Of a stretch of 64,000 nt of DNA, positions 23,966 through 35,690 are shown piece after piece (position 1 is the stretch's first letter; every line of letters begins with the position of its first letter). Source of the DNA: Macrostomum hystrix (taxonomy: Eukaryota; Animalia; Platyhelminthes); assembly GCA_950097015.1 (NCBI GenBank), contig CATNEN010000002.1, positions 62,001-126,000 on the forward strand, given 5' to 3'. The translations under genes and the position numbers were made by a program. The notes below the pieces were generated by a model, which was not told the origin of the DNA, searched no databases, and worked only from the letters and a program-made list of their open reading frames with translations.

Positions 23966-26850
23966 TATCAGGGTGTATCCCAGTGATTCCCAGATTCATC
24001 TCAGAGTGACTCACAGGGTGTATCCCAGTGATTCCCAGATTCATCTCAGAGTGACTCACAGAGTGTATCCCAGTTATTCCCAAATTCATCTCAGAGTGAC
24101 TCACATGGTTTATCCCAGTGATTCCCAGATTCATCTCAGAGTGACACACAGGGTGTATCCCAGTGATTCCTAGATTCATCTCAGAGTGACTCACAGAGTG
24201 TATCCCAGTGATTCCCAGATTTATCTCAGAGTGACTCACAGGGTGTATCCCAGTGATTCTCAGATTCATCTCAGAGTGACTCACAGGGTGTATCCCAGTG
24301 ATTCCCAGATTCATCTCAGAGTGACTCACAGGGTGTATCCCAGTGATTCCCAGATTCATCTCAGACTGACTCACAGGGTGTATCCCAGTGATTCCCAGAT
24401 TCATCTCAGAGTGACTCACAGGGTGTATCCCAGTGATTCCCAGATTCATCTCAGAGTGACTCACAGGGTGTATCCCAGTGATACCCAGATTCATCTCAGA
24501 GTGACTCACAGGGTTTATCCCAGTGATTCCCAGATTCATCTCAGACTGACTCACAGAGTGTATCCCAGTGATTCCCAGATTCATCTCAGAGTGACTCACA
24601 GAGTGTATCCCAGTGATTCCCAGATTCATCTCAGAGTGACTCACATGGTTTATCCCAGTGATTCCCAGATTCATCTCAGAGTGACTCACAGGGTGTATCC
24701 CAGTGATTCCCAGATTCATCTCAGAGTGACTCACAGAGTGTATCCCAGTGATTCCCAGATTCATCTTAGAGTGACTCACAGAGTGTATCCCAGTGATTCC
24801 CAGATTCATCTCAGAGTGACTCACAGAGTGTATCCCAGTGATTCTCAGATTCATCTCAGAGTGACTCACAGGGTGTATCCCAGTGATTCCCAGATTCATC
24901 TCAGACTGACTCACAGGGTGTATCCCAGTGATTCCCAGATTCATCTCAGAGTGACTCACAGGGTGTATCCCAGTGATTCCCAGATTCATCTCAGACTGAC
25001 TCACAGGGTGTATCCCAGTGATTCCCAGATTCATCTCAGAGTGACTCACAGGGTGTATCCCAGTGATTCCCAGATTCATCTCAGAGTGACTCACAGGGTG
25101 TATCCCAGTGATTCCCAGATTCATCTCAGAGTGACTCACAGGGTGTATCCCAGTGATTCCCAGATTCATCTCAGACTGACTCACAGGGTGTATCCCAGTG
25201 ATTCCCAGATTCATCTCAGAGTGACTCACATGGTTTATCCCAGTGATTCCCAGATTCATCTCAGAGTGACTCACAGGGTGTATCCCAGTGATTCCCAGAT
25301 TCATCTCAGACTGACTCACAGGGTGTATCCCAGTGATTCCCAGATTCATCTTAGAGTGACTCACAGAGTGTATCCCAGTGATTCCCAGATTCATCTCAGA
25401 GTGACTCACAGGGTGTATCCCAGTGATTCCCAGATTCATCTCAGAGTGACTCACAGAGTGTATCCCAGTGATTCCCAGATTCATCTCAGAGTGACTCACA
25501 GAGTGTATCCCAGTGATTCCCAGATTCATCTCAGAGTGACTCACAGGGTGTATCCCAGTGATTCCCAGATTCATCTCAGAGTGACTCTCAGGGTGTATCC
25601 CAGTGATTCCCAGATTCATCTCAGAGTGACTCACAGGGTGTATCCCAGTGATTCCCAGATTCATCTCAGAGTGACTCACAGGGTGTATCCCAGTGATTCC
25701 CAGATTCATCTCAGAGTGACTCACAGGGTGTATCCCAGTGATACCCAGATTCATCTCAGACTGACTCACAGGGTGTGTCCCAGTTATTTCCAAATTCATC
25801 TCAGACTGACTCACAGGGTGTATCCCAGTGATTCCCAGATTCATCTCAGAGTGACTCACAGGGTGTATCCCAGTGATTCCCAGATTCATCTCAGAGTGAC
25901 TCACATGGTTTATCCCAGTGATTCCCAGATTCATCTCAGAGTGACTCACAGGGTGTATCCCAGTGATTCCCAGATTCATCTCAGAGTGACTCACAGGGTG
26001 TATCCCAGTGATTCCCAGATTCATCTCAGAGTGACTCACAGAGTGTATCCCAGTGATTCCCAGATTCATCTCAGAGTGACTCACAGAGTGTATCCCAGTG
26101 ATTCCCAGATTCATCTCAGAGTGACTCACAGAGTGTATCCCAGTGATTCCCAGATTCATCTCAGAGTGACTCACAGGGTGTATCCCAGTGATTCCCAGAT
26201 TCATCTCAGAGTGACTCACAGGGTGTATCCCAGTTATTTCCAAATTCATCTCAGAGTGACTCACAGGGTGTATCCCAGTGATTCCCAGATTCATTTCAGA
26301 GTGACTCACAGGGTGTATCCCAGTGATTCCCAGATTCATCTCAGAGTGACTCACAGGGTGTATCCCAGTGATTCCCAGATTCATCTCAGAGTGACTCACA
26401 GAGTGTATCCCAGTGATACCCAGATTCATCTCAGAGTGACTCACAGGGTGTATCCCAGTGATTCCCAGATTCATCTCAGAGTGACTCACATGGTTTATCC
26501 CAGTGATTCCCAGATTCATCTCAGAGTGACTCACAGAGTGTATCCCAGTGATTCCCAGATTCATCTCAGAGTGACTCACAGGGTGTATCCCAGTGATTCC
26601 CAGATTCATCTCAGACTGACTCACAGGGTGTATCCCAGTGATTCCCAGATTCATCTCAGACTGACTCACAGGGTGTATCCCAGTGATTCCCAGATTCATC
26701 TCAGAGTGACTCACAGGGTGTATCCCAGTGATTCCCAGATTCATCTCAGACTGACTCACAGGGTGTATCCCAGTGATTCCCAGATTCATCTCAGAGTGAC
26801 TCACAGGGTGTATCCCAGTGATTCCCAGATTCATCTCAGAGTGACTCACG
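23966..26850. repeat. Homogeneous 45-bp satellite (gggtgtatcccagtgattcccagattcatctcagagtgactcaca), ~64 copies
   Basis: 15-aa periodicity in ORFs on both strands; very few variant positions. Confidence 0.98.
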
Positions 26851-27236
26851 GCACGAAGTGAATCTCAGAGTGAATTACAAAATTAATCATAAAAGATGAC
26901 ACAGTTATAAGTTATGCACTGCAAGAACAAAAACAAAACTAAGTTCAGTAGAAAACAACAGAGCCAAGTAAGTTTCCGTTGATTTAAATGCTATGCAAAC
27001 TATCGACCTCGTTGCCGATTCAATCTGAATTATTTGCGCACCTTTCAGAGTGTACAAACTGATGTACGTGAGCGAATTTCAAAGCTTGAAATTAAAATTC
27101 TGCAGTTAAGAAAAATTTTCTATGTTTAATTGCGATGATCTCTTTGACTTACTTGACTTAGCTGCAGGGGGCATCTTCCGGATGCAGCGGGGAGGCGTTG
27201 CCGCCCATTCCGCTAGCCCCTGGCGACCACGGGCAA

Positions 27237-30200
27237 CTAGAGCTGCGGTGTCGCGCAGGGGGATCCGGTGGTGCCGGCGTCCGCAGCGCGGTCCTCCTCC
27301 GGAGTGTCCAGGAGGTGGAGGGTTGCTCGCCCGGTGGCCCTCAGGTATCGGACGAGCTGGCAGATGTTCTCAGGCCTGAAAACGTCGGGGAGATCCGGGT
27401 TTGGGCCGAGATAGGTGAGCCGGTCCTGAGTGAAGGCGGGGCAGTCGCAAATAAAATGCTCTGCATCCTCAACATAGGAGAGGCAGAAGGGGCATTCCTC
27501 ACTGCGGATTTTGCCTTGCAGGAAGCGGTGCCTGGCGAAACAGCCATGGCCAGAGAGGGCCATGGTGACTGCCCTGATGTCCTTGCGGTTCAGTCCAAGC
27601 AAGGCTTTGCGAAGGGCAGTGGAGGGACAAGGGACAGCAGCGCGAGACTGCCGACAATCGGCGGTATTGATCCATCTGTCCTTGTGCTTTGAGGTCACCC
27701 ACTGGTTAATCCGAGTGTTGACGACGGCGGTAGGGGTGGAGACCGCAGGCACGGGGCCAAAAAGCGAACCCGTCGAACCGGCCTTGGCGAGGCTGTCGGC
27801 CAATTCGTTACCAGGGTGGCCAGAGTGCCCTGGAATCCACCTTAGGGACACCTTGTTGTGGGTCCCTAAGCGGTTGAGTTGCGCGACGCAGTCGAGGACT
27901 GTGCGCGAGCAGGTGTGCGTGCGTCCAAGGGCATGGATCGCCGCCTGGCTGTCCGAGTGGAGGAAGATTTCTGCTCCGTGGACGTTTTGGTTGATCAGCT
28001 CCAGGGCGCAGGAGCTGATGGCGAGAACTTCGTTCTGGAAAACAGTAGAGTTTATGCCGGTGTGCTGGGAGAAGGTCGCCACAGTTTTCCCTCCGGACAT
28101 AATGCAGTAGCCGAAACCAGAGACCGAGTTGATTTGCGATCCGTCGGTGAAGCAGTGAATTTCACGGGGTTGGCCGTGGTCACGTACTTCCTGGCGAGGC
28201 GGAATGCTGGTTTTGAATTTTTGCGGTGGGCACAGCGTCGACGGGATTCCGTCGGAGAGAATTTTGAGACCTCCTGCTGCGTCCAGGTCCCGTAGGCTGA
28301 GGTCGCCATGGGGCTGGAGGTTCCGCTTGCTGAAGGCAAGTTGCTTCCGGATGGAGATACCCGCGTCCAGAAGACGACGAGCCGTCTTCATCGCCTCCCC
28401 CTTGATAAAAAGATCTAAAGGGGGAAGGTCCAGGAAGGCATTCATGCCAGCGAAGGGAGTGGAGGGTGCCGCACTCATGATGGCTCGACAAGCACGGCCC
28501 TGCACCTTGTTTAGGGCCTCCAGGACCCCTTTGGTCTCCAGGACCCCTTTGGTCTCCAGGGCACTATTCCAGATGAAGCCGGCAAAAGAGATGGCCGGTC
28601 TTACAATGGTAGTGTAAATCCACCAGAGACGGCGGGGGGTGAGGCCCCAGGTGGCGCCGAAGGCTCTGCGAATCTGCGCGAGCGTCGCAAGAGCTTTACG
28701 GGTTTTGAATTTGACGTGAGGTGTCCAGCTCAACCTGTGGTCGAGGATGACACCTAAGCATCTGGTTTGCTTCTCCATGGCGATTGGTTTGTTATAGAGA
28801 AGGAGAGGCTCAATCCTCCAGTTTCGTTTGCTGGTGAACATAATGGCGACGGTCTTGGACTCAGAGAGTTTGAGGCCGCAGCCATTGGCCCAGCGTTCGG
28901 CACGGTGGATGAAAGCTTGCAGAAGGTCTCTAAGGACCGGGGGAGACGGTCCGGCCACGGTGGCGGTGACGTCGTCAGCATAGCCGATTTTTTGGACCTG
29001 GTCCGGGTCAGGGCTGCAGAGCAGTTCGTCCATGACAAGGTTCCAAAGGATCGGACTGAGAACGCCACCCTGCGGGCCTCCCTTCTGGACATTCACAGAA
29101 CGGGAGTGTCCAAGCAGGTGCGAGGTGGCAGTTCGGTGAGAGATCATATACATGATCCAGCGGGTGAGGTGCTCGTGCGTAGCCCGGCGTTCCAGGGCTC
29201 GCCTAAAGGCTCCGAAGAGCACATTGTCGAAGGCACCATCAATGTCGAGGAAAAGCGAGAGAGCAAAACCGGTGCCAAGCACGGCGCGCTCCAGCTTGTC
29301 GACAATGGCATGCAGAGCACTTTCGATGGAACGTCCGGATCGAAAGGCGTGCTGGTTGGCGGAGAGCGGGGAGTTCCTCAGCTCAACGTGAAGGAGGCGC
29401 CAAAGAACAAGCCTTTCAAGCAGCTTAAGAAAGAAAGATGTTAAGCTGATGGGGCGGAAGGCTTTGGCGGAGTGGTAGTCTCCCTTCCCAGGTTTGGGGA
29501 TGAAGACGATAGTGGCTTCCTGCCAAGACCTGGGTACGTACCCGAGGGTGATACAGGCCTTGAACAGGTTGCAAAGGAGGCCGAGGAACCTGTCATTTTT
29601 TACCGCTTCATGTAGGAAGGCGGGGTAAATGTTGTCAGGTCCAGGCGACTTAAAAGGCGAGAAGGAGTTAGCAGCGCGAGCTGTCCGTTCTCTAGTGATA
29701 ATAGTTGTCGCAAGGATGTGTCCACCCGGAGTGTGGTCCGGCGGGTCCTGAAGCGGCGCAGTCTGGGGGAAGGCGCTGGCGAGCATGATGTCCAGCGATT
29801 CGCCAGGATTCTCAGCAAGCCGGCCGTCCGGTCTTTTGATCACTGAGAGCTTCGACATTTTGTCAAGAGTGAGCGCTTTTACCACGCGAGAAGTTGGGCG
29901 GGCGCCCTCCAGCTCGGAGCAGTATTGGCGCCACTTTTCGGACTTCGCTTTCCTGGTGTCACGCTTAAAGTCACGAATCGCATTCTGGTAGGCGGTCAGG
30001 TCAGCTGGGTCCTTGCTTTTCCGCGCAATCCGCTGGAGGGATTTGGCCTTTCGCCGGAGGGTTCCAAGCGCTGGGTTCCACCAGGGAGCGGATTTTTTGC
30101 CTTTGTAGGCTTTAAGAGGGCAAGAGGTTTCATGAGCTGTCAAGATGGTCATGCTGAGTAGATCAGCCAGATCGTCCACTTCTTGACAGGTGGCAGGAAC

Positions 30201-30959
30201 AACGGATTCTAACTGGTTGGTCTGGCGCTTCACGGATTCCGCAAAGGCCGTCCAGTCAGTATTCCGGGCGTTCCTTCTCCACAGAATACCAGGCTTGGAG
30301 TAGGAGCTTAGCAACCGGAAACGAATGAAGCGATGGTCAGACAGAGATTCCTCTTCGTCCCACACCTGCCAGTTCCTAATCAGAGGGATCAGGCCCTGAG
30401 AGGCGAGGGTGGCGTCAAGGACCTCCGTCCATCGTCCATTGTCAAAGGTGGGTGTGCCACCCGAGTTGCAGAACTCAATATTGGTGGTGCAGATGTAGGC
30501 AAGGAGATCCTCGCCTCTGCAGTTGGAGGTAACACTGCCCCAGTGGGTGTGGTGGGCATTAATGTCGCCTGCCACCAGCAGCTCAAAGTCGCGGTCTGAG
30601 CAGTAGTCCACGAGGGAAGTGAGACTGGGCGGAACCGCAGGACCGTCACCAGGAATGTATATAGAGGCGATGATGACGGTGCGGTTCGGGAGAATGTGGT
30701 TGGTTTGGATGACACAGAGGTCTTTGTCAGAGAGGTCTGGTCTATACCAAGCTTTAAGATCGGTAGTCGCGAACACAGCAGCCCTGGGGTTTTGGGGCAT
30801 GAAAAAACAGTCAAAACCAGCAGGAATGTTCGGAATCTTACCTTTCTTCGTCCAGGGCTCTTGGAGGAGGATGATGCCCGGTTTTTCGAAGTCCACCACA
30901 CGCGCCAGGTTGGTCGAGGCCGCGATGCAGTGGTGCAGGTTCAGCTGCAGGAAGCTCAC
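27237..30959 (-). CDS. LINE ORF2 polyprotein: AP endonuclease, reverse transcriptase, RNase H, C-terminal CCHC-type zinc finger
   Basis: QLNLHH..LQEP, GDINAHH, SDH (APE); [21 protein letters not shown] (RT); FTDGS, NEVLAI, SDSQAA, WIPGH, GNELAD (RNase H); [14 protein letters not shown]. There is no ATG: the frame is open upstream and overlaps ORF1. Confidence 0.96.
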
Positions 30960-30994
30960 CCCAGGAGGGGCGGTCCGTGCGGCTATCTGCTGGC

Positions 30995-32482
30995 CTACGG
31001 CGAGTTGTTCAGGAGCGATTCCTCGTCCTCGCCGGTGTTTTGCCCGAGCTCCATCGGTTCCTCCTGAATCGGATCCAGAGTTGAGGCCGGGGCTGCCGCA
31101 ACAGCGGCGTCCGTGTCCTCAACCCGGTTTTCCGCTGGGGGTTCCGATGAAACATTGGGCCGGGTGGTGCTGCGGTGGCGTCCACTGTTGGGGTCCGACA
31201 GCTGTCTGGCGCGCTGAGTCAAGCCAGCACGGATGGTGTTGCGGGCGGGTTTCCGGCCCTTACCACATCCGCCTGTCGTTGCGGCTCGCGCGGCTTTGCC
31301 CCTGATAGGGTCCGCATCCTCGGAGTGGTCGTGACGATCAGGAGTCTGTGTTCCAGGGCGCAGGGGCCCGGCAGAGCTCTGGTTCGTCCGTTTCCGCTTT
31401 TCCGGGGGCGGCGGGCGAGTGGCGTCGGACTCGAAGCTGAAAATCTGCATTCGAGTGAGGCCTGCACTGATGTAGGACATGTCTGGGCAGCGGAGCATCC
31501 AGCTGTCCGACAATCCTAGGATGGCCGTGAAACCGTCTCCACCAGGTCTGGTGATGGTTTCATGAACCACGACACCGTTTGCTGGCAGATCCGGGTGGAT
31601 TGCCAACAGCAGGCGGCGCAGTTCTCCGGCGTTGGTGATGGCGCTGCGAGCTGGAATCCAAACACGATGACGGTGTGTCTGGGGGCGCTCGTCCTCCCTG
31701 TAGATAAACAGGTTGCCCATTTCCGTGCCCCAGTCGAAGGATTTCAGCATCTCGAGGAGTTGCTGTCCGGACTGGTTGTCGGCAGGCTGGACAATGAGGG
31801 CTTGGTCCTGGATGTCGGTCTTCAGGACGTGCAGTACAGTGCCGCTCAGTGCCAGTTTGACCAGATGGGAGTCCAATCTGCGCCAGATCTGGTCGAGTTG
31901 CGCTGTTGTGAGGGGCGTCTCCTGGCCTCGGATAACCAAGGCCGGCTGCCTCTTTGCCATAGCAGCGTAAGTGCGCTTTGGCCTTGTGGTTTGGCCGGCG
32001 CCTCCCGCAACGGGCCCCCCAGCAGTCGTCGGAGTTTCCGGACGACTGTGAGAGGTTCCGCCGCGAGAGGAACCGGATGCCCCAGAGGCCTGGGCGGCAC
32101 TTTTCCGCGCTTCCGGATTTCCCGGACGGCGCGAGGAGTCCGCCTCCTTGTTGGGTGCCGGTTCCTCCGCGATGTTCGCAGAGTTGCCGGCCCCCTCCTC
32201 GGGGGCGGTGGTTGGCGCGGATTTCGCAGCCAACCGTACTTCCTGTTTTCGCCGCCGGAATTCCTGGAGGCGGGCGAGGCTGCGGGCTTGCGTGGAAGGG
32301 GAGCGTTTGCTCTTTGATCCAGCCGCTCTGGTGTTTTCCTGAGTGGCGGAGGAGCAGGATGAATTTTGGGCGCCGGTGGAACCGGTGTCGCCCTGGCGCT
32401 GGTCCTGAGGATCTGCGTCGCCGGCCGGGGTCGGCGTTTCAGCAGGGTCCTGGGACGTGCTGGAGCTGTAGTGGGACTCCAT
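30995..32482 (-). CDS. LINE ORF1 (gag-like, 495 aa)
   Basis: ATG-initiated ORF directly upstream of ORF2. RTYAAMAK followed by [18 protein letters not shown] resembles the DUF4780-type ORF1 of LOA-clade elements (from memory, not searched). Confidence 0.88.
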
Positions 32483-32607
32483 AGGTCGCTGGAAAAAGAG
32501 AAAGAAGAGAATAAAAATAAAAACCGCTAATGGCCGGATAGACTCCCCGGACCTTTCAGCCCCTCAGCGCGGTGAGACCTTAGGCATAAGAGGACACCTA
32601 AAGCAGT

Positions 32608-33370
32608 GCCAGGCCCGCAGACTGGCTGCGTACCCTGTTGAGGTCGAAGGGTGACACCTGTCCCTCAGAGCCGTAGCCAGAGGTACCTGATCACGCACAG
32701 GTGCACGAGCGCTGCGGACTGGCCGCATACCCTGTTAAGGTCAAAGGGTGACACCCTTCCCTCAGAGCCGTAGCCAGAGGTACCTGATCACGCACAGGTG
32801 CGCGAGACGCTGCGGACTGGCCGCATACCCTGTTAAGGTCAAAGGGTGACACCTTTCCCTCAGAGCCGTAGCCAGAGGCACCTGATCACGCACAGGTGCA
32901 CGAAAACTGCGGACTGGCCGCATACCCTGTTAAGGTCAAAGGGTGACACCTTTCCCTCAGAGCCGTAGCCAGAGGTACCTGATCACGCACAGGTGCGCGA
33001 GACGCTGCGGACTGGCCGCATACCCTGTCAAGGTCAAAGGGTAACACCTCTCCCTCAGAGCCGTAGCCAGAGGTACCTGATCACGCACAGGTGCGCGAGA
33101 CGCTGCGGACTGGCCGCATACCCTGTCAAGGTCAAAGGGTAACACCTCTCCCTCAGAGCCGTAGCCAGAGGTACCTGATCACGCACAGGTGCGCGAGACG
33201 CTGCGGACTGGCCGCATACCCTGTCAAGGTCAAAGGGTAACACCTCTCCCTCAGAGCCGTAGCCAGAGGTACCTGATCACGCACAGGTGCACGAAAGCTG
33301 CGGACTCGCCGCATACCCTGTTAAGGTCAAAGGGTGACACCTTTCCCTCCAGCCAGGGCTAGAGGTACCC
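32608..33370 (-). repeat. 98-bp tandem repeats (~8 units) in the LINE 5'UTR
   Basis: ccctcagagccgtagccagaggtacc recurs every 97-98 bp from 32662 to 33249, with divergent terminal units. Confidence 0.96.
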
Positions 33371-33409
33371 AGTTTGGCCAGAGGCCCTGGATGGGTCATC
33401 CAGCGCTGT

Positions 33410-33637
33410 TGCCCATTCTGTCCGGCTGCCCTAGGGTCAGCCTTGAACACTCGCGGGACGTGTACCCATGGGTCAGCTGACGGGACAGCGTGGAGGGATC
33501 CCTGCACCCGGAGGTACAGGGCTCCTTCCTGCCAGGCCTGCTCAAAAAACGACTGCAGGTGTGAGGCATCGCAGACCTTAGCCCGTAGGCCTGGTCTGAC
33601 TCATACCACACAGGCATTGTGTCCCGCCGGTGCGAGC
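33410..33637 (-). ncRNA. HDV-like self-cleaving ribozyme at the exact 5' end of the LINE
   Basis: Minus strand: P1 GCUCGC (33637-32)/GCGAGU (33454-49); P2 CCCAU/AUGGG; P3 GGG/CCC; L3 UACACGU; P1.1 AC/GU; P4 GGCUG/CAGCC; J4/2 C-A-G-A with catalytic C at 33420. Confidence 0.8.
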
Positions 33638-33646
33638 CGATGATCT

Positions 33647-33682
33647 CTTCCTATTGGTCAAAATGCGCCAGCCAATAGGAAG
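33647..33682. promoter_or_regulatory. Inverted CCAAT-box pair (11-bp perfect inverted repeat cttcctattgg/ccaataggaag), putative SoxB proximal promoter
   Basis: Seen in the sequence about 150 bp upstream of ATG 33830, with an Inr-like tcagtg at about 33710. Confidence 0.45.
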
Positions 33683-33829
33683 CGATCCAACGGGCACATG
33701 CCCCTCCATTCAGTGAAACCTTTCTTCACACAAAACCCACAACAATAACTCTAAGCGCAACGCATTTTTAACTCTCCAATTATGTAAGAGAATAACTTGA
33801 ACAAATAACAAAGCGTGTTCAGCAATTGG

Positions 33830-34108
33830 ATGGAGACAGAAGCAGCAGCAGCAGCAATTGAACAATCAGAGACTGATGATTCGCGACACTATGACATTCA
33901 CGTTAGCAGTGAGAGAGGCTTCGACCTTCAGTTCTACCCGAACTGGTTGCAGCAACAGCAGCAGCAGCAGGCCATCATGATTCAGCAGCAGCAACAGCTG
34001 GCCGACTGCTACAATATGGACAAGTCGGATAACGATGATGACAGTGAAATCAGCGACTGTCAGATTGGCGATTGCCATAACAACAGCAGCACTGGCGGCA
34101 GTTTAAAT
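33830..34108 (+). CDS. soxB: Probable first coding exon of the SoxB gene (polyAla/polyGln, acidic)
   Basis: METEAAAAA..QQQQ..; ends AAT|GTGAGT in phase 0, which matches the phase-0 acceptor aacag|TTC at 36928. The HMG exon has no ATG of its own before the box. Confidence 0.68.
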
Positions 34109-34159
34109 GTGAGTCAAAACCAATGTGACTCTTTTTTTCTATTTGAGACGGGTTGAGAC

Positions 34160-35690
34160 TGGGTAAATATAAAAAGGCTTAAGAGAGATGAGACAGGGGA
34201 GAGATGAGACAGGGGAGAGATGAGACAGGGGAGAGATGAGACAGGGGAGGGATGAGACAAGGGAAAATATTAGACACGGGAGAGATGAGACAAGGGAAAA
34301 GATTAGACACGGGAGAGATGAGACAGGGGAGAGATGAGACAGGGGAGAGATGAGACAGGGGAGAGATGACACACGGGAGAGATAATATAAGGGAGAGATG
34401 AGACACGGGAGAGATGGGACACGGGAGAGATGAGACAGGGGAGAGATGAGACAGGGGAGAAATGTGACAGGGGAGAGATGAGACACGGGAGAGATGAGAC
34501 AGGGGAGAGATGAGACAGGGGAGAGATGAGACAGGGGAGAGATGAGACAGGGGAGAGATGAGACAGGGGAGGGATGAGACAAAGGAGAAATGAGACAGGG
34601 GAGAGATAATACAAGGGAGAGATGAAACAGGGGAGAGATGAGACAGGGGAGAGATGAGACAGGGGAGAGATGAGACAGGGGAGGGATGAGACAAGGGAAA
34701 ATATTAGACACGGGAGAGATGAGACAAGGGAAAAGATTAGACACGGGAGAGATGAGACAGGGGAGAGATGAGACAGGGGAGAGATGAGACAGGGGAGAGA
34801 TGACACACGGGAGAGATAATATAAGGGAGAGATGAGACACGGGAGAGATGGGACACGGGAGAGATGAGACAGGGGAGAGATGAGACAGGGGAGAAATGTG
34901 ACAGGGGAGAGATGAGACACGGGAGAGATGAGACAGGGGAGAGATGAGACAGGGGAGAGATGAGACAGGGGAGAGATGAGACAGGGGAGAGATGAGACAG
35001 GGGAGGGATGAGACAAAGGAGAAATGAGACAGGGGAGAGATAATACAAGGGAGAGATGAAACAGGGGAGAGATGAGACACGGGAGAGATAATACAAGGGA
35101 GAGATGAGACGCGTGAGAGATGAGACAGGGGAGAGATGAGACAGGGGAGAAATGTGACAGGGGAGAGATGACACACGGGAGAGATAATATAAGGGAGAGA
35201 TGAGACACGGGAGAGATGGGACACGGGAGAGATGAGACAGGGGAGAGATGAGACAGGGGAGAGATGACACACGGGAGAGATGACACACGGGAGAGATAAT
35301 ACAAGGGAGAGATGAGACACGGGAAAGATGGGACACGTGAGAGATGAGACACGGCAGAGATGAGACACGGGAGAAAAATACAAGGGAGAGACGTGACAGG
35401 GGAGAGATGAGACACGGGAGAGATAATATAAGGGAGAGATGAGACACGGGAGAGATGGGACACGGGAGAGATGAGACACGGGAGAGATGACACACGGGAG
35501 AGATGGGACACGGGAGAGATGAGACACGGGAGAGATGGGACACGGGAGAGATGGGACACGGGAGAGATGGGACACGGGAGAGATGAGACACGGGAGAGAT
35601 TAGACAGGGAAGAGATGAGACAGCCGTGTTGGAAGTGGTCGCTGTATTGGATTTGGGAGCATTGCGGGCCCCACCTGGTCACCCCAAAAA
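34160..35690 (+). mobile_element. Degenerate hAT-MITE copy with an expanded 16-bp minisatellite (1.45 kb), in the SoxB intron
   Basis: GGGAGAGATGAGACA[C/G] array. The right flank gtgttggaag..ggatttgggagcattgcgggcc is homologous to the right arm of the copy at 41989-42677. Confidence 0.75.

What the first reader, a model, noticed from the sequence alone, without database searches (positions are those of the whole stretch)
33410..33637. HDV-like self-cleaving ribozyme whose predicted cut site is the first base of the LINE
Seen on the minus strand: every element of the HDV nested double pseudoknot is present in order. P1 is G1-CUCGC (33637-33632) with GCGAG-U (33454-33449), giving the G1.U wobble. 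P2 is CCCAU (33472-68)/AUGGG (33416-12) and P3 is GGG/CCC. The 7-nt L3 is U-A-C-A-C-G-U, with the conserved U first and G sixth. P1.1 is formed by L3 A-C with the G-U following P1 (A-U in place of the C-G of HDV). P4 is GGCUG-ACCCUAGGG-CAGCC and J4/2 is C-A-G-A (CNRA, catalytic C at 33420). The ~155-nt J1/2 insert is closed by a 9-bp helix (GGCGGGACA 33628-20/UGUCCCGUC 33487-79) and holds further hairpins. G1 coincides with the element boundary defined independently by the 12-bp TSD. Established: HDV-like ribozymes process the 5' ends of R2, L1Tc, RTE and some LOA-type (Baggins) elements. Inference: this copy was made from a self-cleaved RNA and the ribozyme may still be active. P1 has only 6 bp, one fewer than the classic HDV fold.
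Basis: partly seen in the sequence, partly recalled or inferred. Interest (0 to 1): 0.88.

Follow-up and report, generated by a model that had tools for sequence, protein, structure and literature searches.

The report
HDV-like ribozyme heading a flatworm LINE
The first 226 bases of an intact jumping gene (a LINE) in a Macrostomum-like flatworm genome fold into the hepatitis-delta-type self-cutting RNA shape, and relatives keep that shape through matched base changes, so this is a well-supported but expected new example of a known way for LINEs to trim their own RNA.

Summary
Observation confirmed. G1 (33637, minus strand) is the first base after a perfect 12-bp target-site duplication. The element is 6.5 kb, with intact ORF1 and APE-RT-RNase H ORF2.

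A motif search anchored on the first base matched 0 of 20,000 shuffles. It matched only 5 other, weak positions in the 128 kb of both window strands.

Relatives decide the case: L001 (ORF1 47% identical), L002, L010 and contigs from other runs. They keep P1, P1.1, P2, P4 and the helix closing the 155-nt J1/2 insert through 10 double (compensatory) changes. 87% of cells are paired, against 31-51% when partners are slid. P3, L3 U1/C5/G6 and a C four bases before the P2 3' strand never change.

Several copies with different flanks begin at 33637 +/- a few bases, and the L001 contig starts exactly at its G1.

Weak points:
- No Rfam HDV model matches.
- J4/2 is CNRA in only two of four sequences.
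- Cleavage is untested.

A 65-nt block inside J1/2 is the best-conserved part of the 5' UTR, and its role is unknown.

The scan has already reported this ribozyme family on other pieces of this genome (s1-316729 and others). Verdict: new member of a known kind, of modest interest.

The parts
27145..33637 (-). Full-length LINE, about 6.49 kb. Order: ribozyme, 98-bp repeat array, ORF1, ORF2, short 3' UTR ending in (TAAGTCAAG)-like repeats.
33638..33649 (-). 5' copy of the 12-bp target-site duplication aagagatcatcg
27133..27144 (-). 3' copy of the target-site duplication, 12/12 identical
33412..33637 (-). HDV-like ribozyme, 226 nt. The predicted cut is 5' of G33637.
33632..33637 (-). P1 5' strand GCUCGC (G1 = 33637)
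   Evidence: It covaries with L001, which has GCCUGC/GCAGGC.
33473..33631 (-). It is a structured domain closed by a 9-bp helix (33628-33620 with 33487-33479).
   Evidence: The closing helix shows 3 double changes and the inner helices 5.
33553..33617 (-). Highly conserved 65-nt block inside J1/2, containing a stacked hairpin (GGUAU...GACC-AGGCC..GGGCU-GGUC...GAUGCC)
   Evidence: 80% identity to L001 against 39-57% for the other segments of the first 260 nt of the 5' UTR; contigs of organisms C and D match 33575-33617 with 1 mismatch..
33468..33472 (-). P2 5' strand CCCAU
33455..33467 (-). P3 (GGG/CCC) enclosing the 7-nt L3 UACACGU. L3 positions 2-3 form P1.1.
   Evidence: P3 and L3 U1, C5, G6, U7 are invariant in 4 sequences.
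33447..33454 (-). P1 3' strand GCGAGU (33454-33449) followed by the P1.1 partner GU (33448-33447)
33424..33442 (-). P4 hairpin GGCUGACC-CUA-GGGCAGCC, with one A.G mismatch
   Evidence: the 33427 A>G variant keeps a U.G pair.
33412..33420 (-). J4/2 CAGA (candidate catalytic C at 33420) and P2 3' strand AUGGG (33416-33412)
   Evidence: the 33418 G>A variant keeps CNRA.
32620..33349 (-). 7.5 copies of a 98-bp tandem repeat between the ribozyme and ORF1
   Evidence: This is the subject of another note, s1-384976.
30995..32482 (-). ORF1, 495 aa, open, no Pfam match
27237..30959 (-). ORF2, 1240 aa, open, with APE endonuclease, reverse transcriptase and RNase H domains

Best explanation
The 5' terminal 226 nt of this LINE RNA form an HDV-like nested double-pseudoknot self-cleaving ribozyme that carries a large structured insertion in J1/2.

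Inferred mechanism, from what is established for R2, L1Tc, baggins and RTE elements:
1. The element is transcribed as part of a longer read-through or upstream-initiated transcript.
2. The ribozyme folds and cuts immediately 5' of G1, using the J4/2 cytosine (33420) and a Mg2+ held by the G1.U wobble and the L3 U.G pair.
3. This frees an RNA whose first base is the element's first base.
4. Complete reverse transcription of that RNA yields copies that begin exactly at G1 next to the target-site duplication, as here.

Shown here: the fold, its covariation, the invariant active-site positions, and the shared 5' end.

Inferred: cleavage itself, its chemistry, and any added role in translation or protein binding.
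For: Sequence and boundary:
- All helices are present in the canonical order.
- G1 is the first base after a perfect 12-bp TSD.
- The anchored motif is found in 0 of 20,000 shuffles and at only 3 other weak loci in 128 kb.

Covariation:
- P1: GCUCGC/GCGAGU in the window, GCCUGC/GCAGGC in L001.
- P1.1: AC/GU in the window, CU/AG in L001.
- P2: CCCAU/AUGGG in the window, CUCAGA/UCUGAG in L001, CCCAAA/UUUGGG in L002, CCUCAGA/UCUGAGG in L010. A contig of organism C has CCCAGA/UCUGGG.
- P4: U-A in the window against A-U in L002. L001 and L010 have different hairpins at the same place.
- The 9-bp J1/2 closing helix has 3 double changes.
- On alignment A1, 87% of cells are paired against 31-51% when partners are slid by 1-3 columns. 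Ten pairs change on both sides, against 0-4 when slid.

Invariant in all four sequences: P3 GGG/CCC, L3 U1/C5/G6/U7, and a C four bases upstream of the P2 3' strand.

Shared 5' end:
- Depth of multicopy contigs collapses at 33637, and contigs diverge into different flanks at 33633-33639.
- Relatives in organisms C and D start homology with GCUUGC and GCCUGC.
- The L001 contig begins exactly at its G1 although it runs about 530 nt past the element's 3' end.

Precedent: HDV-like ribozymes at LINE 5' ends, and J1/2 loops of about 250 nt that are needed for activity (PMC3774820, PMC6765202).
Against: - No Rfam HDV-like covariance model matches the window or the relatives, even at E <= 10. The long insert may explain this, but that was not shown.
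- J4/2 is CAGA (window) and CUGA (L010) but CUGC (L001) and CGUG (L002), so the canonical CNRA is not kept.
- One to three extra bases separate P4 from the candidate catalytic C.
- P1 has 6 bp and P2 only 5 bp in this copy.
- P1.1 is reduced to one pair (U.U mismatch) in L002 and L010.
- L001 and L002 have G1-C rather than the G1.U wobble.
- Only two sequences (window, L001) cover both strands of P1, so the P1 and closing-helix covariation rests on one comparison.
- The minimum-free-energy fold prefers an alternative pairing of the closing-helix strand with the P3/P1 3' strand.
- No RNA data and no cleavage assay. The library types of the runs are unknown.
Confidence: 0.85

Rival explanations
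1. The fold is a conserved structured 5' UTR element that is not catalytic. It would be, for example, an IRES-like or ORF-protein-binding scaffold, or part of an internal promoter. In this reading the uniform 5' end at G1 comes from transcription initiation at the first base.
For: - The best-conserved part of the 5' UTR is not the catalytic core but a 65-nt block in J1/2.
- J4/2 departs from CNRA in two relatives.
- There is no Rfam hit.
- In L1Tc the same 5' segment is both an internal promoter and a ribozyme (PMC3383444).
- R2 protein binds an extended pseudoknot within the ribozyme region (PMC6765202). So non-catalytic roles of such 5' ends are real.
Against: - The elements specific to the HDV active site are exactly those kept or covarying: G1 at the cut site, P1.1, L3 U1/G6, and a C before the P2 3' strand.
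- A promoter or protein site does not predict a nested double pseudoknot whose P1 starts on the first base.
- These roles are not exclusive with cleavage.
Confidence: 0.1
2. The match is a chance motif. The low-information HDV descriptor with a free 155-nt J1/2 happens to fit the first 226 nt of this copy.
For: - A loose descriptor gives many hits: 147 in the element.
- Without the L3 identities, the anchored descriptor still matches 64 of 20,000 shuffles.
Against: - The strict anchored motif matches 0 of 20,000 shuffles.
- The same fold is found at the homologous place in L001, L002 and L010 despite 39-57% identity of the segments.
- There are 10 double compensatory changes, and pairing is lost when partners are slid.
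Confidence: 0.02

Closest known systems
HDV-like ribozymes at the 5' end of R2 elements (Drosophila, Bombyx mori and others)
   Same: Same nested double-pseudoknot fold at the 5' end of a non-LTR retrotransposon. In some lineages cleavage is at the element's first base. J1/2 loops can be large: about 250 nt in B. mori, where part of the loop is required for activity (PMC3774820).
   Different: R2 is a single-ORF, restriction-like-endonuclease element that inserts site-specifically in 28S rDNA and is co-transcribed by Pol I. This element has two ORFs and APE + RT + RNase H, and it sits here outside rDNA at a site with a 12-bp TSD. The J4/2 sequence and the spacer before the candidate catalytic C also differ.
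HDV-like ribozymes of baggins (LOA clade) and RTE elements, from the Webb/Ruminski/Luptak searches as summarised in PMC6765202
   Same: APE-type LINEs without fixed insertion sites that carry a 5' terminal HDV-like ribozyme. The ribozyme is thought to free the element from read-through co-transcripts.
   Different: Whether this LINE belongs to the LOA clade was not tested here. To my knowledge the described examples are compact, whereas this one carries a 155-nt structured and partly ultra-conserved J1/2 domain. The host is a macrostomid flatworm, for which the held literature has no ribozyme report.
L1TcRz / Pr77 of Trypanosoma cruzi L1Tc
   Same: An HDV-like ribozyme in the first bases of an APE + RT + RNase H LINE. 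The same segment also has a second function, as an internal promoter (PMC3383444, PMC4035085).
   Different: L1TcRz is 77 nt and compact. There is no sequence similarity. A dual function is only a hypothesis for the flatworm element.
Genomic HDV and CPEB3 ribozymes
   Same: Same helix order. G1 pairs with a pyrimidine at the base of P1. P3 has 3 bp. L3 begins with U and has C-G at positions 5-6. P1.1 is formed by L3 positions 2-3. An N-C/A-A-A linker precedes P4, and a C precedes the P2 3' strand.
   Different: - P1 has 6 bp rather than 7.
- J1/2 is about 155 nt rather than a few.
- One to three extra bases lie between P4 and the candidate catalytic C.
- The last two J4/2 positions are variable.
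- No Rfam model matches.

Membership tests
HDV-like self-cleaving ribozymes | Nested double pseudoknot with strands in the order P1, (J1/2), P2, P3, L3, P3', P1', P1.1, P4, J4/2, P2' | tested here: met
   All strands are present in order in the window and in L001. The 3' two-thirds are present in L002 and L010.
HDV-like self-cleaving ribozymes | Cleavage-site G1 paired with U (wobble) or C at the base of P1 | tested here: met
   G33637.U33449 in the window. The partner is U in L010 and in an organism D copy, and C in L001 and L002.
HDV-like self-cleaving ribozymes | P1.1 mini-helix between L3 positions 2-3 and the two bases after P1 | tested here: met
   AC/GU in the window against CU/AG in L001, so both pairs change and stay paired. 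In L002 and L010 only one pair forms (C-G plus a U.U mismatch).
HDV-like self-cleaving ribozymes | Conserved active-site bases: L3 U (U20 equivalent) and G (G25 equivalent), and a J4/2 cytosine (C75 equivalent) | tested here: met
   L3 U1, C5 and G6 and a C four bases before P2' are invariant in 4 of 4 sequences. That this C is the catalytic base cannot be tested here.
HDV-like self-cleaving ribozymes | J4/2 of the form C-N-R-A directly after P4 | tested here: inconclusive
   J4/2 is CAGA in the window and CUGA in L010, but CUGC in L001 and CGUG in L002. One to three spacer bases follow P4.
HDV-like self-cleaving ribozymes | Helices supported by compensatory changes among relatives | tested here: met
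   10 pairs change on both sides, 87% of cells are paired against 31-51% when slid. One search adds P2 CCCAGA/UCUGGG in organism C.
HDV-like self-cleaving ribozymes | Match to a curated Rfam HDV-like covariance model (HDV, CPEB3, drz families) | tested here: not met
   No HDV-type hit at E <= 10 in window 32000-35000 or in L001, L002 or L010. The models have no place for a 155-nt J1/2 insert, so this speaks against membership of those specific Rfam families, not against the class.
HDV-like self-cleaving ribozymes | Mg2+-dependent site-specific self-cleavage giving 5'-OH and 2',3'-cyclic phosphate ends | not testable with these tools
   This needs in vitro transcription and cleavage assays and mapping of 5'-OH ends.
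Ribozyme-terminated non-LTR retrotransposons | The ribozyme's cut site coincides with the element's 5' end in independent copies | tested here: met
   The TSD puts the first base at 33637. Contigs with different flanks diverge at 33633-33639. The L001 contig starts at its G1.
   The domain set is present, but the I, Tad, Ingi and other clades share it. No reference RT set was available for a tree. ORF1 of more distant relatives carries PF16012 DUF4780.

The most novel reading that the evidence does not exclude
The 155-nt J1/2 insertion is not a passive loop but an obligatory functional domain of an extended HDV-like ribozyme class. Its 65-nt core hairpin (33553-33617) is kept at 80% identity between elements whose ORF1 DNA is 55% identical, and almost unchanged in contigs of four organisms. 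It could be needed for folding or cleavage, as a segment of the B. mori R2 J1/2 loop is. Alternatively it could add a second function at the very 5' end, such as a binding site for the element's proteins, an internal promoter, or a ribosome entry site.
Probability: 0.4. Interest if true: 0.5.

Novelty: new member of a known kind. Interest (0 to 1): 0.35.

Why it matters
HDV-like ribozymes are the established way for several LINE clades to free themselves from read-through transcripts and fix their 5' end. This adds a well-supported case in a free-living flatworm lineage with an apparently active two-ORF LINE, and none is described for that lineage in the literature searched.

The practical value is in annotation:
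- The ribozyme marks true full-length 5' ends.
- The current Rfam models miss the family, so an alignment of these sequences could seed a new model.

The open point of wider interest is the conserved J1/2 domain. It would allow a direct test of how peripheral domains contribute to HDV-type catalysis or to LINE RNA recognition.

Tried and rejected
- Rfam search at permissive E-values on the window and on relatives found no HDV-type hit, only chance miRNA-like hits.
- A search for a second copy of the 5' end in the window found none.
- A DNA pattern scan of metagenome contigs with the P2-P3-L3 core gave 5 hits, all unrelated GC-rich bacterial contigs. L002 itself is not in that collection.
- ORF1-based scans of viral and prokaryote genome contigs found no relatives.
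- Exact-protein look-ups:
  - The window ORF1 and P0098 are not on record.
  - The P0006 and P0022 contigs are held without DNA.
  - L011, L012 and L013 lack the ribozyme part.
  - L003 and L004 are distant LINEs with a DUF4780 ORF1. They show no convincing HDV-like motif in the 5' sequence held.
- A third protein search, with P0101, added nothing.
- A loose unanchored descriptor was rejected as a test because it hits by chance many times.
- MAFFT alignment A2 misaligned the core by one column and was not used for counting. A1 was used.
- The alternative MFE pairing of the closing-helix strand with the P3'/P1' strand was considered as a switch. By eye, the complementarity is not kept in L001, so it was set aside.
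- The Ruminski et al. 2011 paper could not be read. Its content is cited only through reviews.

Full report
**1. What is at the site**

- P1: GCUCGC (33637-32) with GCGAGU (33454-49), 6 bp, with G1.U at the base.
- J1/2 closing helix: GGCGGGACA (33628-20) with UGUCCCGUC (33487-79), 9 bp.
- P2: CCCAU (33472-68) with AUGGG (33416-12).
- P3: GGG/CCC around a 7-nt L3, UACACGU.
- P1.1: L3 positions 2-3 (A, C) with the G-U that follows P1.
- P4: a hairpin, GGCUGACC-CUA-GGGCAGCC, with one A.G mismatch.
- J4/2: CAGA, with the C at 33420.

**2. The element**

Downstream on the same strand lie, in order:
- a 98-bp tandem array (32620-33349, 7.5 copies);
- an open ORF1 of 495 aa (32482-30995, no Pfam match);
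- an open ORF2 of 1240 aa (30959-27237) with APE endonuclease, reverse transcriptase and RNase H domains.

The element ends in short TAAGTCAAG-like repeats. It is flanked by a perfect 12-bp duplication, aagagatcatcg, at 33649-33638 and 27144-27133. The base after the 5' copy differs from the base after the 3' copy, so the 5' boundary is unambiguous: the first base is G33637, the proposed G1.

Protein names among the homologues point to a genome close to Macrostomum lignano. The LINE sits in unique DNA between two satellite arrays (45-bp and 16-bp units).

**3. Is it more than chance?**

HDV descriptors carry little information. A loose one with a free J1/2 hits this element 147 times, so a bare match proves nothing. 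I therefore anchored the test on the independent fact, the TSD-defined first base.

The anchored descriptor requires:
- P1 of 6 bp starting at base 1;
- P3 of 3 Watson-Crick pairs;
- a 7-nt L3 with U1 and G6;
- a two-pair P1.1;
- a 5-bp P2 whose 3' strand is preceded by C at -4.

Results:
- It matched 0 of 20,000 dinucleotide-preserving shuffles of the first 400 nt. Without the L3 identities it matched 64 of 20,000.
- Slid over every position of both strands of the window, it matched 6 positions. One is 33637. The other five fall in three loci with AU/GU-rich helices and no P4.
- The prior chance that such a motif starts on the element's first base is therefore of the order of 1 in 10,000 or less.

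**4. Relatives**

Protein searches with ORF1 and ORF2 and exact-protein look-ups gave three informative loci:
- L001: a 6.5-kb Logan contig. ORF1 is 47% and ORF2 73% identical.
- L002: a JGI metagenome contig.
- L010: from the same sample as L001.

L002 and L010 are cut inside J1/2, so they lack the P1 5' strand.

Helix by helix:

| Helix | window | L001 | L002 | L010 |
|---|---|---|---|---|
| P1 | GCUCGC/GCGAGU | GCCUGC/GCAGGC | 3' strand only | 3' strand only |
| P1.1 | AC/GU | CU/AG | UC/GU (one pair, U.U) | UC/GU (one pair, U.U) |
| P2 | CCCAU/AUGGG | CUCAGA/UCUGAG | CCCAAA/UUUGGG | CCUCAGA/UCUGAGG |
| P4 | U-A pair, one A.G mismatch | unrelated perfect hairpin, 11 bp | A-U pair, mismatch repaired | unrelated perfect hairpin, 7 bp |
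| Closing helix | GGCGGGACA/UGUCCCGUC | GCAGGGCGC/GCGCUCUGC | not held | not held |

- In P1, two pairs change on both sides, and G.U becomes G-C.
- In P1.1, both pairs change on both sides between the window and L001.
- In the closing helix, three pairs change on both sides.

Invariant in all four sequences: P3 GGG/CCC, L3 U1, C5, G6 and U7, and a C four bases before the P2 3' strand.

On alignment A1 with the pseudoknotted structure written out:
- 87% of cells form standard pairs, against 31-51% when 3' partners are slid by 1-3 columns.
- Ten pairs change on both sides, against 0-4 when slid.
- The unpaired cells are mostly L001's differently sized P4 and two stray end bases of L002. Both are alignment effects.

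RNAalifold on the J1/2 part of the window and L001 adds five more compensatory pairs in inner helices.

**5. Reads and contigs of public runs**

- The summed contig depth of this multicopy sequence collapses in the bin that contains 33637.
- Three contigs of run X5 leave the window sequence exactly at 33637 into different flanks. Others leave at 33633 (X3) and 33639 (X10). Independent copies therefore share this 5' end.
- One X3 contig carries this very insertion with its flank.
- Variants seen in close copies respect the structure: 33427 A>G turns a P4 U-A into U.G, and 33418 G>A keeps J4/2 as C-N-R-A. Almost all other variants fall in J1/2.
- A very abundant contig of organism C shares only the 51-nt core (33417-33467). 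On either side it has CCCAGA and UCUGGG, a further compensatory version of P2.
- Loose ends from organisms C and D show homology beginning with GCUUGC and GCCUGC after unrelated flanks. These are further P1 5' strands at the element start.
- The run types are not on record, so none of this is RNA evidence.

The L001 contig begins exactly at its G1 yet continues about 530 nt beyond the element's 3' end into unique sequence. That is the pattern expected of a 5'-processed, 3'-read-through transcript, if that run is RNA. I could not check the run type.

**6. What speaks against it**

- No Rfam HDV-like model matches the window or the relatives, even at E <= 10. The 155-nt insert is a plausible reason, but that is not shown.
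- J4/2 is CNRA only in the window and L010. It is CUGC in L001 and CGUG in L002.
- One to three spacer bases precede the candidate catalytic C.
- P1 has 6 bp and P2 5 bp in this copy.
- P1.1 is a single pair in L002 and L010.
- P1 and closing-helix covariation rest on one full-length comparison.
- The pseudoknot-free MFE fold (z = -3.9) prefers to pair the closing-helix 5' strand with the similar GUCCCGC of the core. By eye, that alternative is not kept in L001.

**7. The J1/2 domain**

Against L001, identity varies along the first 260 nt of the 5' UTR:
- positions 21-85 (window 33617-33553): 80%;
- the other segments compared: 39-57%;
- ORF1 DNA, for comparison: 55%.

Contigs of organisms C and D match 33575-33617 with a single mismatch while diverging on both sides. 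The block folds into a stacked hairpin with one compensatory change. Its role is unknown.

Precedents:
- The B. mori R2 ribozyme has a J1/2 loop of about 250 nt, and a 35-nt part of it is needed for cleavage (PMC3774820).
- R2 protein binds a pseudoknot in the extended ribozyme region (PMC6765202).
- The first 77 nt of L1Tc are both promoter and ribozyme (PMC3383444).

**8. Mechanism and comparison**

The best reading is a self-cleaving HDV-like ribozyme that frees the LINE RNA from upstream co-transcribed sequence at G1. This is as established for R2, R4/Dong, L1Tc, baggins and RTE elements (PMC3774820, PMC6765202, PMC4035085).

The fold and its conservation are shown here. Cleavage and its role are inferred.

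The main rival is a conserved but non-catalytic 5' structure, with G1 set by transcription initiation. That rival does not explain why exactly the HDV active-site features are the ones kept.

The LOA label was not tested. The domain set alone does not distinguish LOA from I, Tad or Ingi.

**9. Novelty**

- No paper in the held library links Macrostomum to ribozymes.
- For flatworm LINEs the library yields twister variants in Schistosoma (PMC8501958) and a planarian R2 among the R2 ribozymes (PMC3774820).
- The scan itself has already reported this ~230-nt ribozyme on other pieces of this genome (s1-316729, s1-316742, s1-085003, s1-084981, s1-368583). It has also reported compact 66-68-nt HDV-like ribozymes on other LINE families there (s1-286102, s1-278212).

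The result is a new member of a known kind. The conserved J1/2 domain is the only part that might repay experiments.

Noticed in passing
window 33553-33617 (minus strand): A 65-nt block inside the ribozyme's J1/2 insert is the most conserved part of the 5' UTR. It is 80% identical to L001, against 39-57% for the other segments compared and 55% for ORF1 DNA. Contigs of two other organisms match part of it with one mismatch. It folds as a stacked hairpin and its function is unknown.
   Followed up: partly
window 32620-33349: 7.5 tandem copies of a 98-bp unit lie between the ribozyme and ORF1. L011 starts inside similar repeats, and L001 has a shorter 5' UTR (547 nt against 1155 nt). This is the subject of note s1-384976.
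   Followed up: partly
window 33647-33682: An 11-bp inverted repeat, cttcctattgg / ccaataggaag, carries two CCAAT/ATTGG boxes with a 14-nt spacer. It lies immediately upstream of the insertion and overlaps the TSD by 3 nt. It produced the chance mir-3613 hit. It could be a host promoter element able to drive read-through into the LINE.
   Followed up: no
window 23969-26849 and 34183-35623: Two satellite arrays flank the region: a 45-bp unit x 64 copies and a 16-bp unit x 90 copies (strong GC and AT skew). They explain the very long ORFs listed on both strands there and the spurious Pfam hits.
   Followed up: partly
window 33417-33467, run X9 record 28: A 784-nt contig of organism C with very high depth (about 650) shares only the 51-nt ribozyme core and diverges on both sides, although its P2 strands still pair. 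This suggests another abundant element, or a non-autonomous derivative, that uses the same ribozyme core.
   Followed up: no
L001:1-6492: The contig starts exactly at the ribozyme's G1 but runs about 530 nt past the LINE 3' end into unique sequence with an opposite-strand ORF. This is as expected for a 5'-cleaved, 3'-read-through transcript if the run is RNA. The library type was not checked.
   Followed up: partly
L010:2049-2130: A strong hairpin at the ORF1/ORF2 junction of a relative draws several weak miRNA-precursor hits (E about 1-7). It was not examined in the window.
   Followed up: no
window 33620-33628 against 33452-33460: The closing-helix 5' strand GGCGGGAC can alternatively pair with GUCCCGC of the P3'/P1' strand, and the MFE fold uses this pairing. 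It could be a misfold trap. It does not seem to be conserved in L001.
   Followed up: partly
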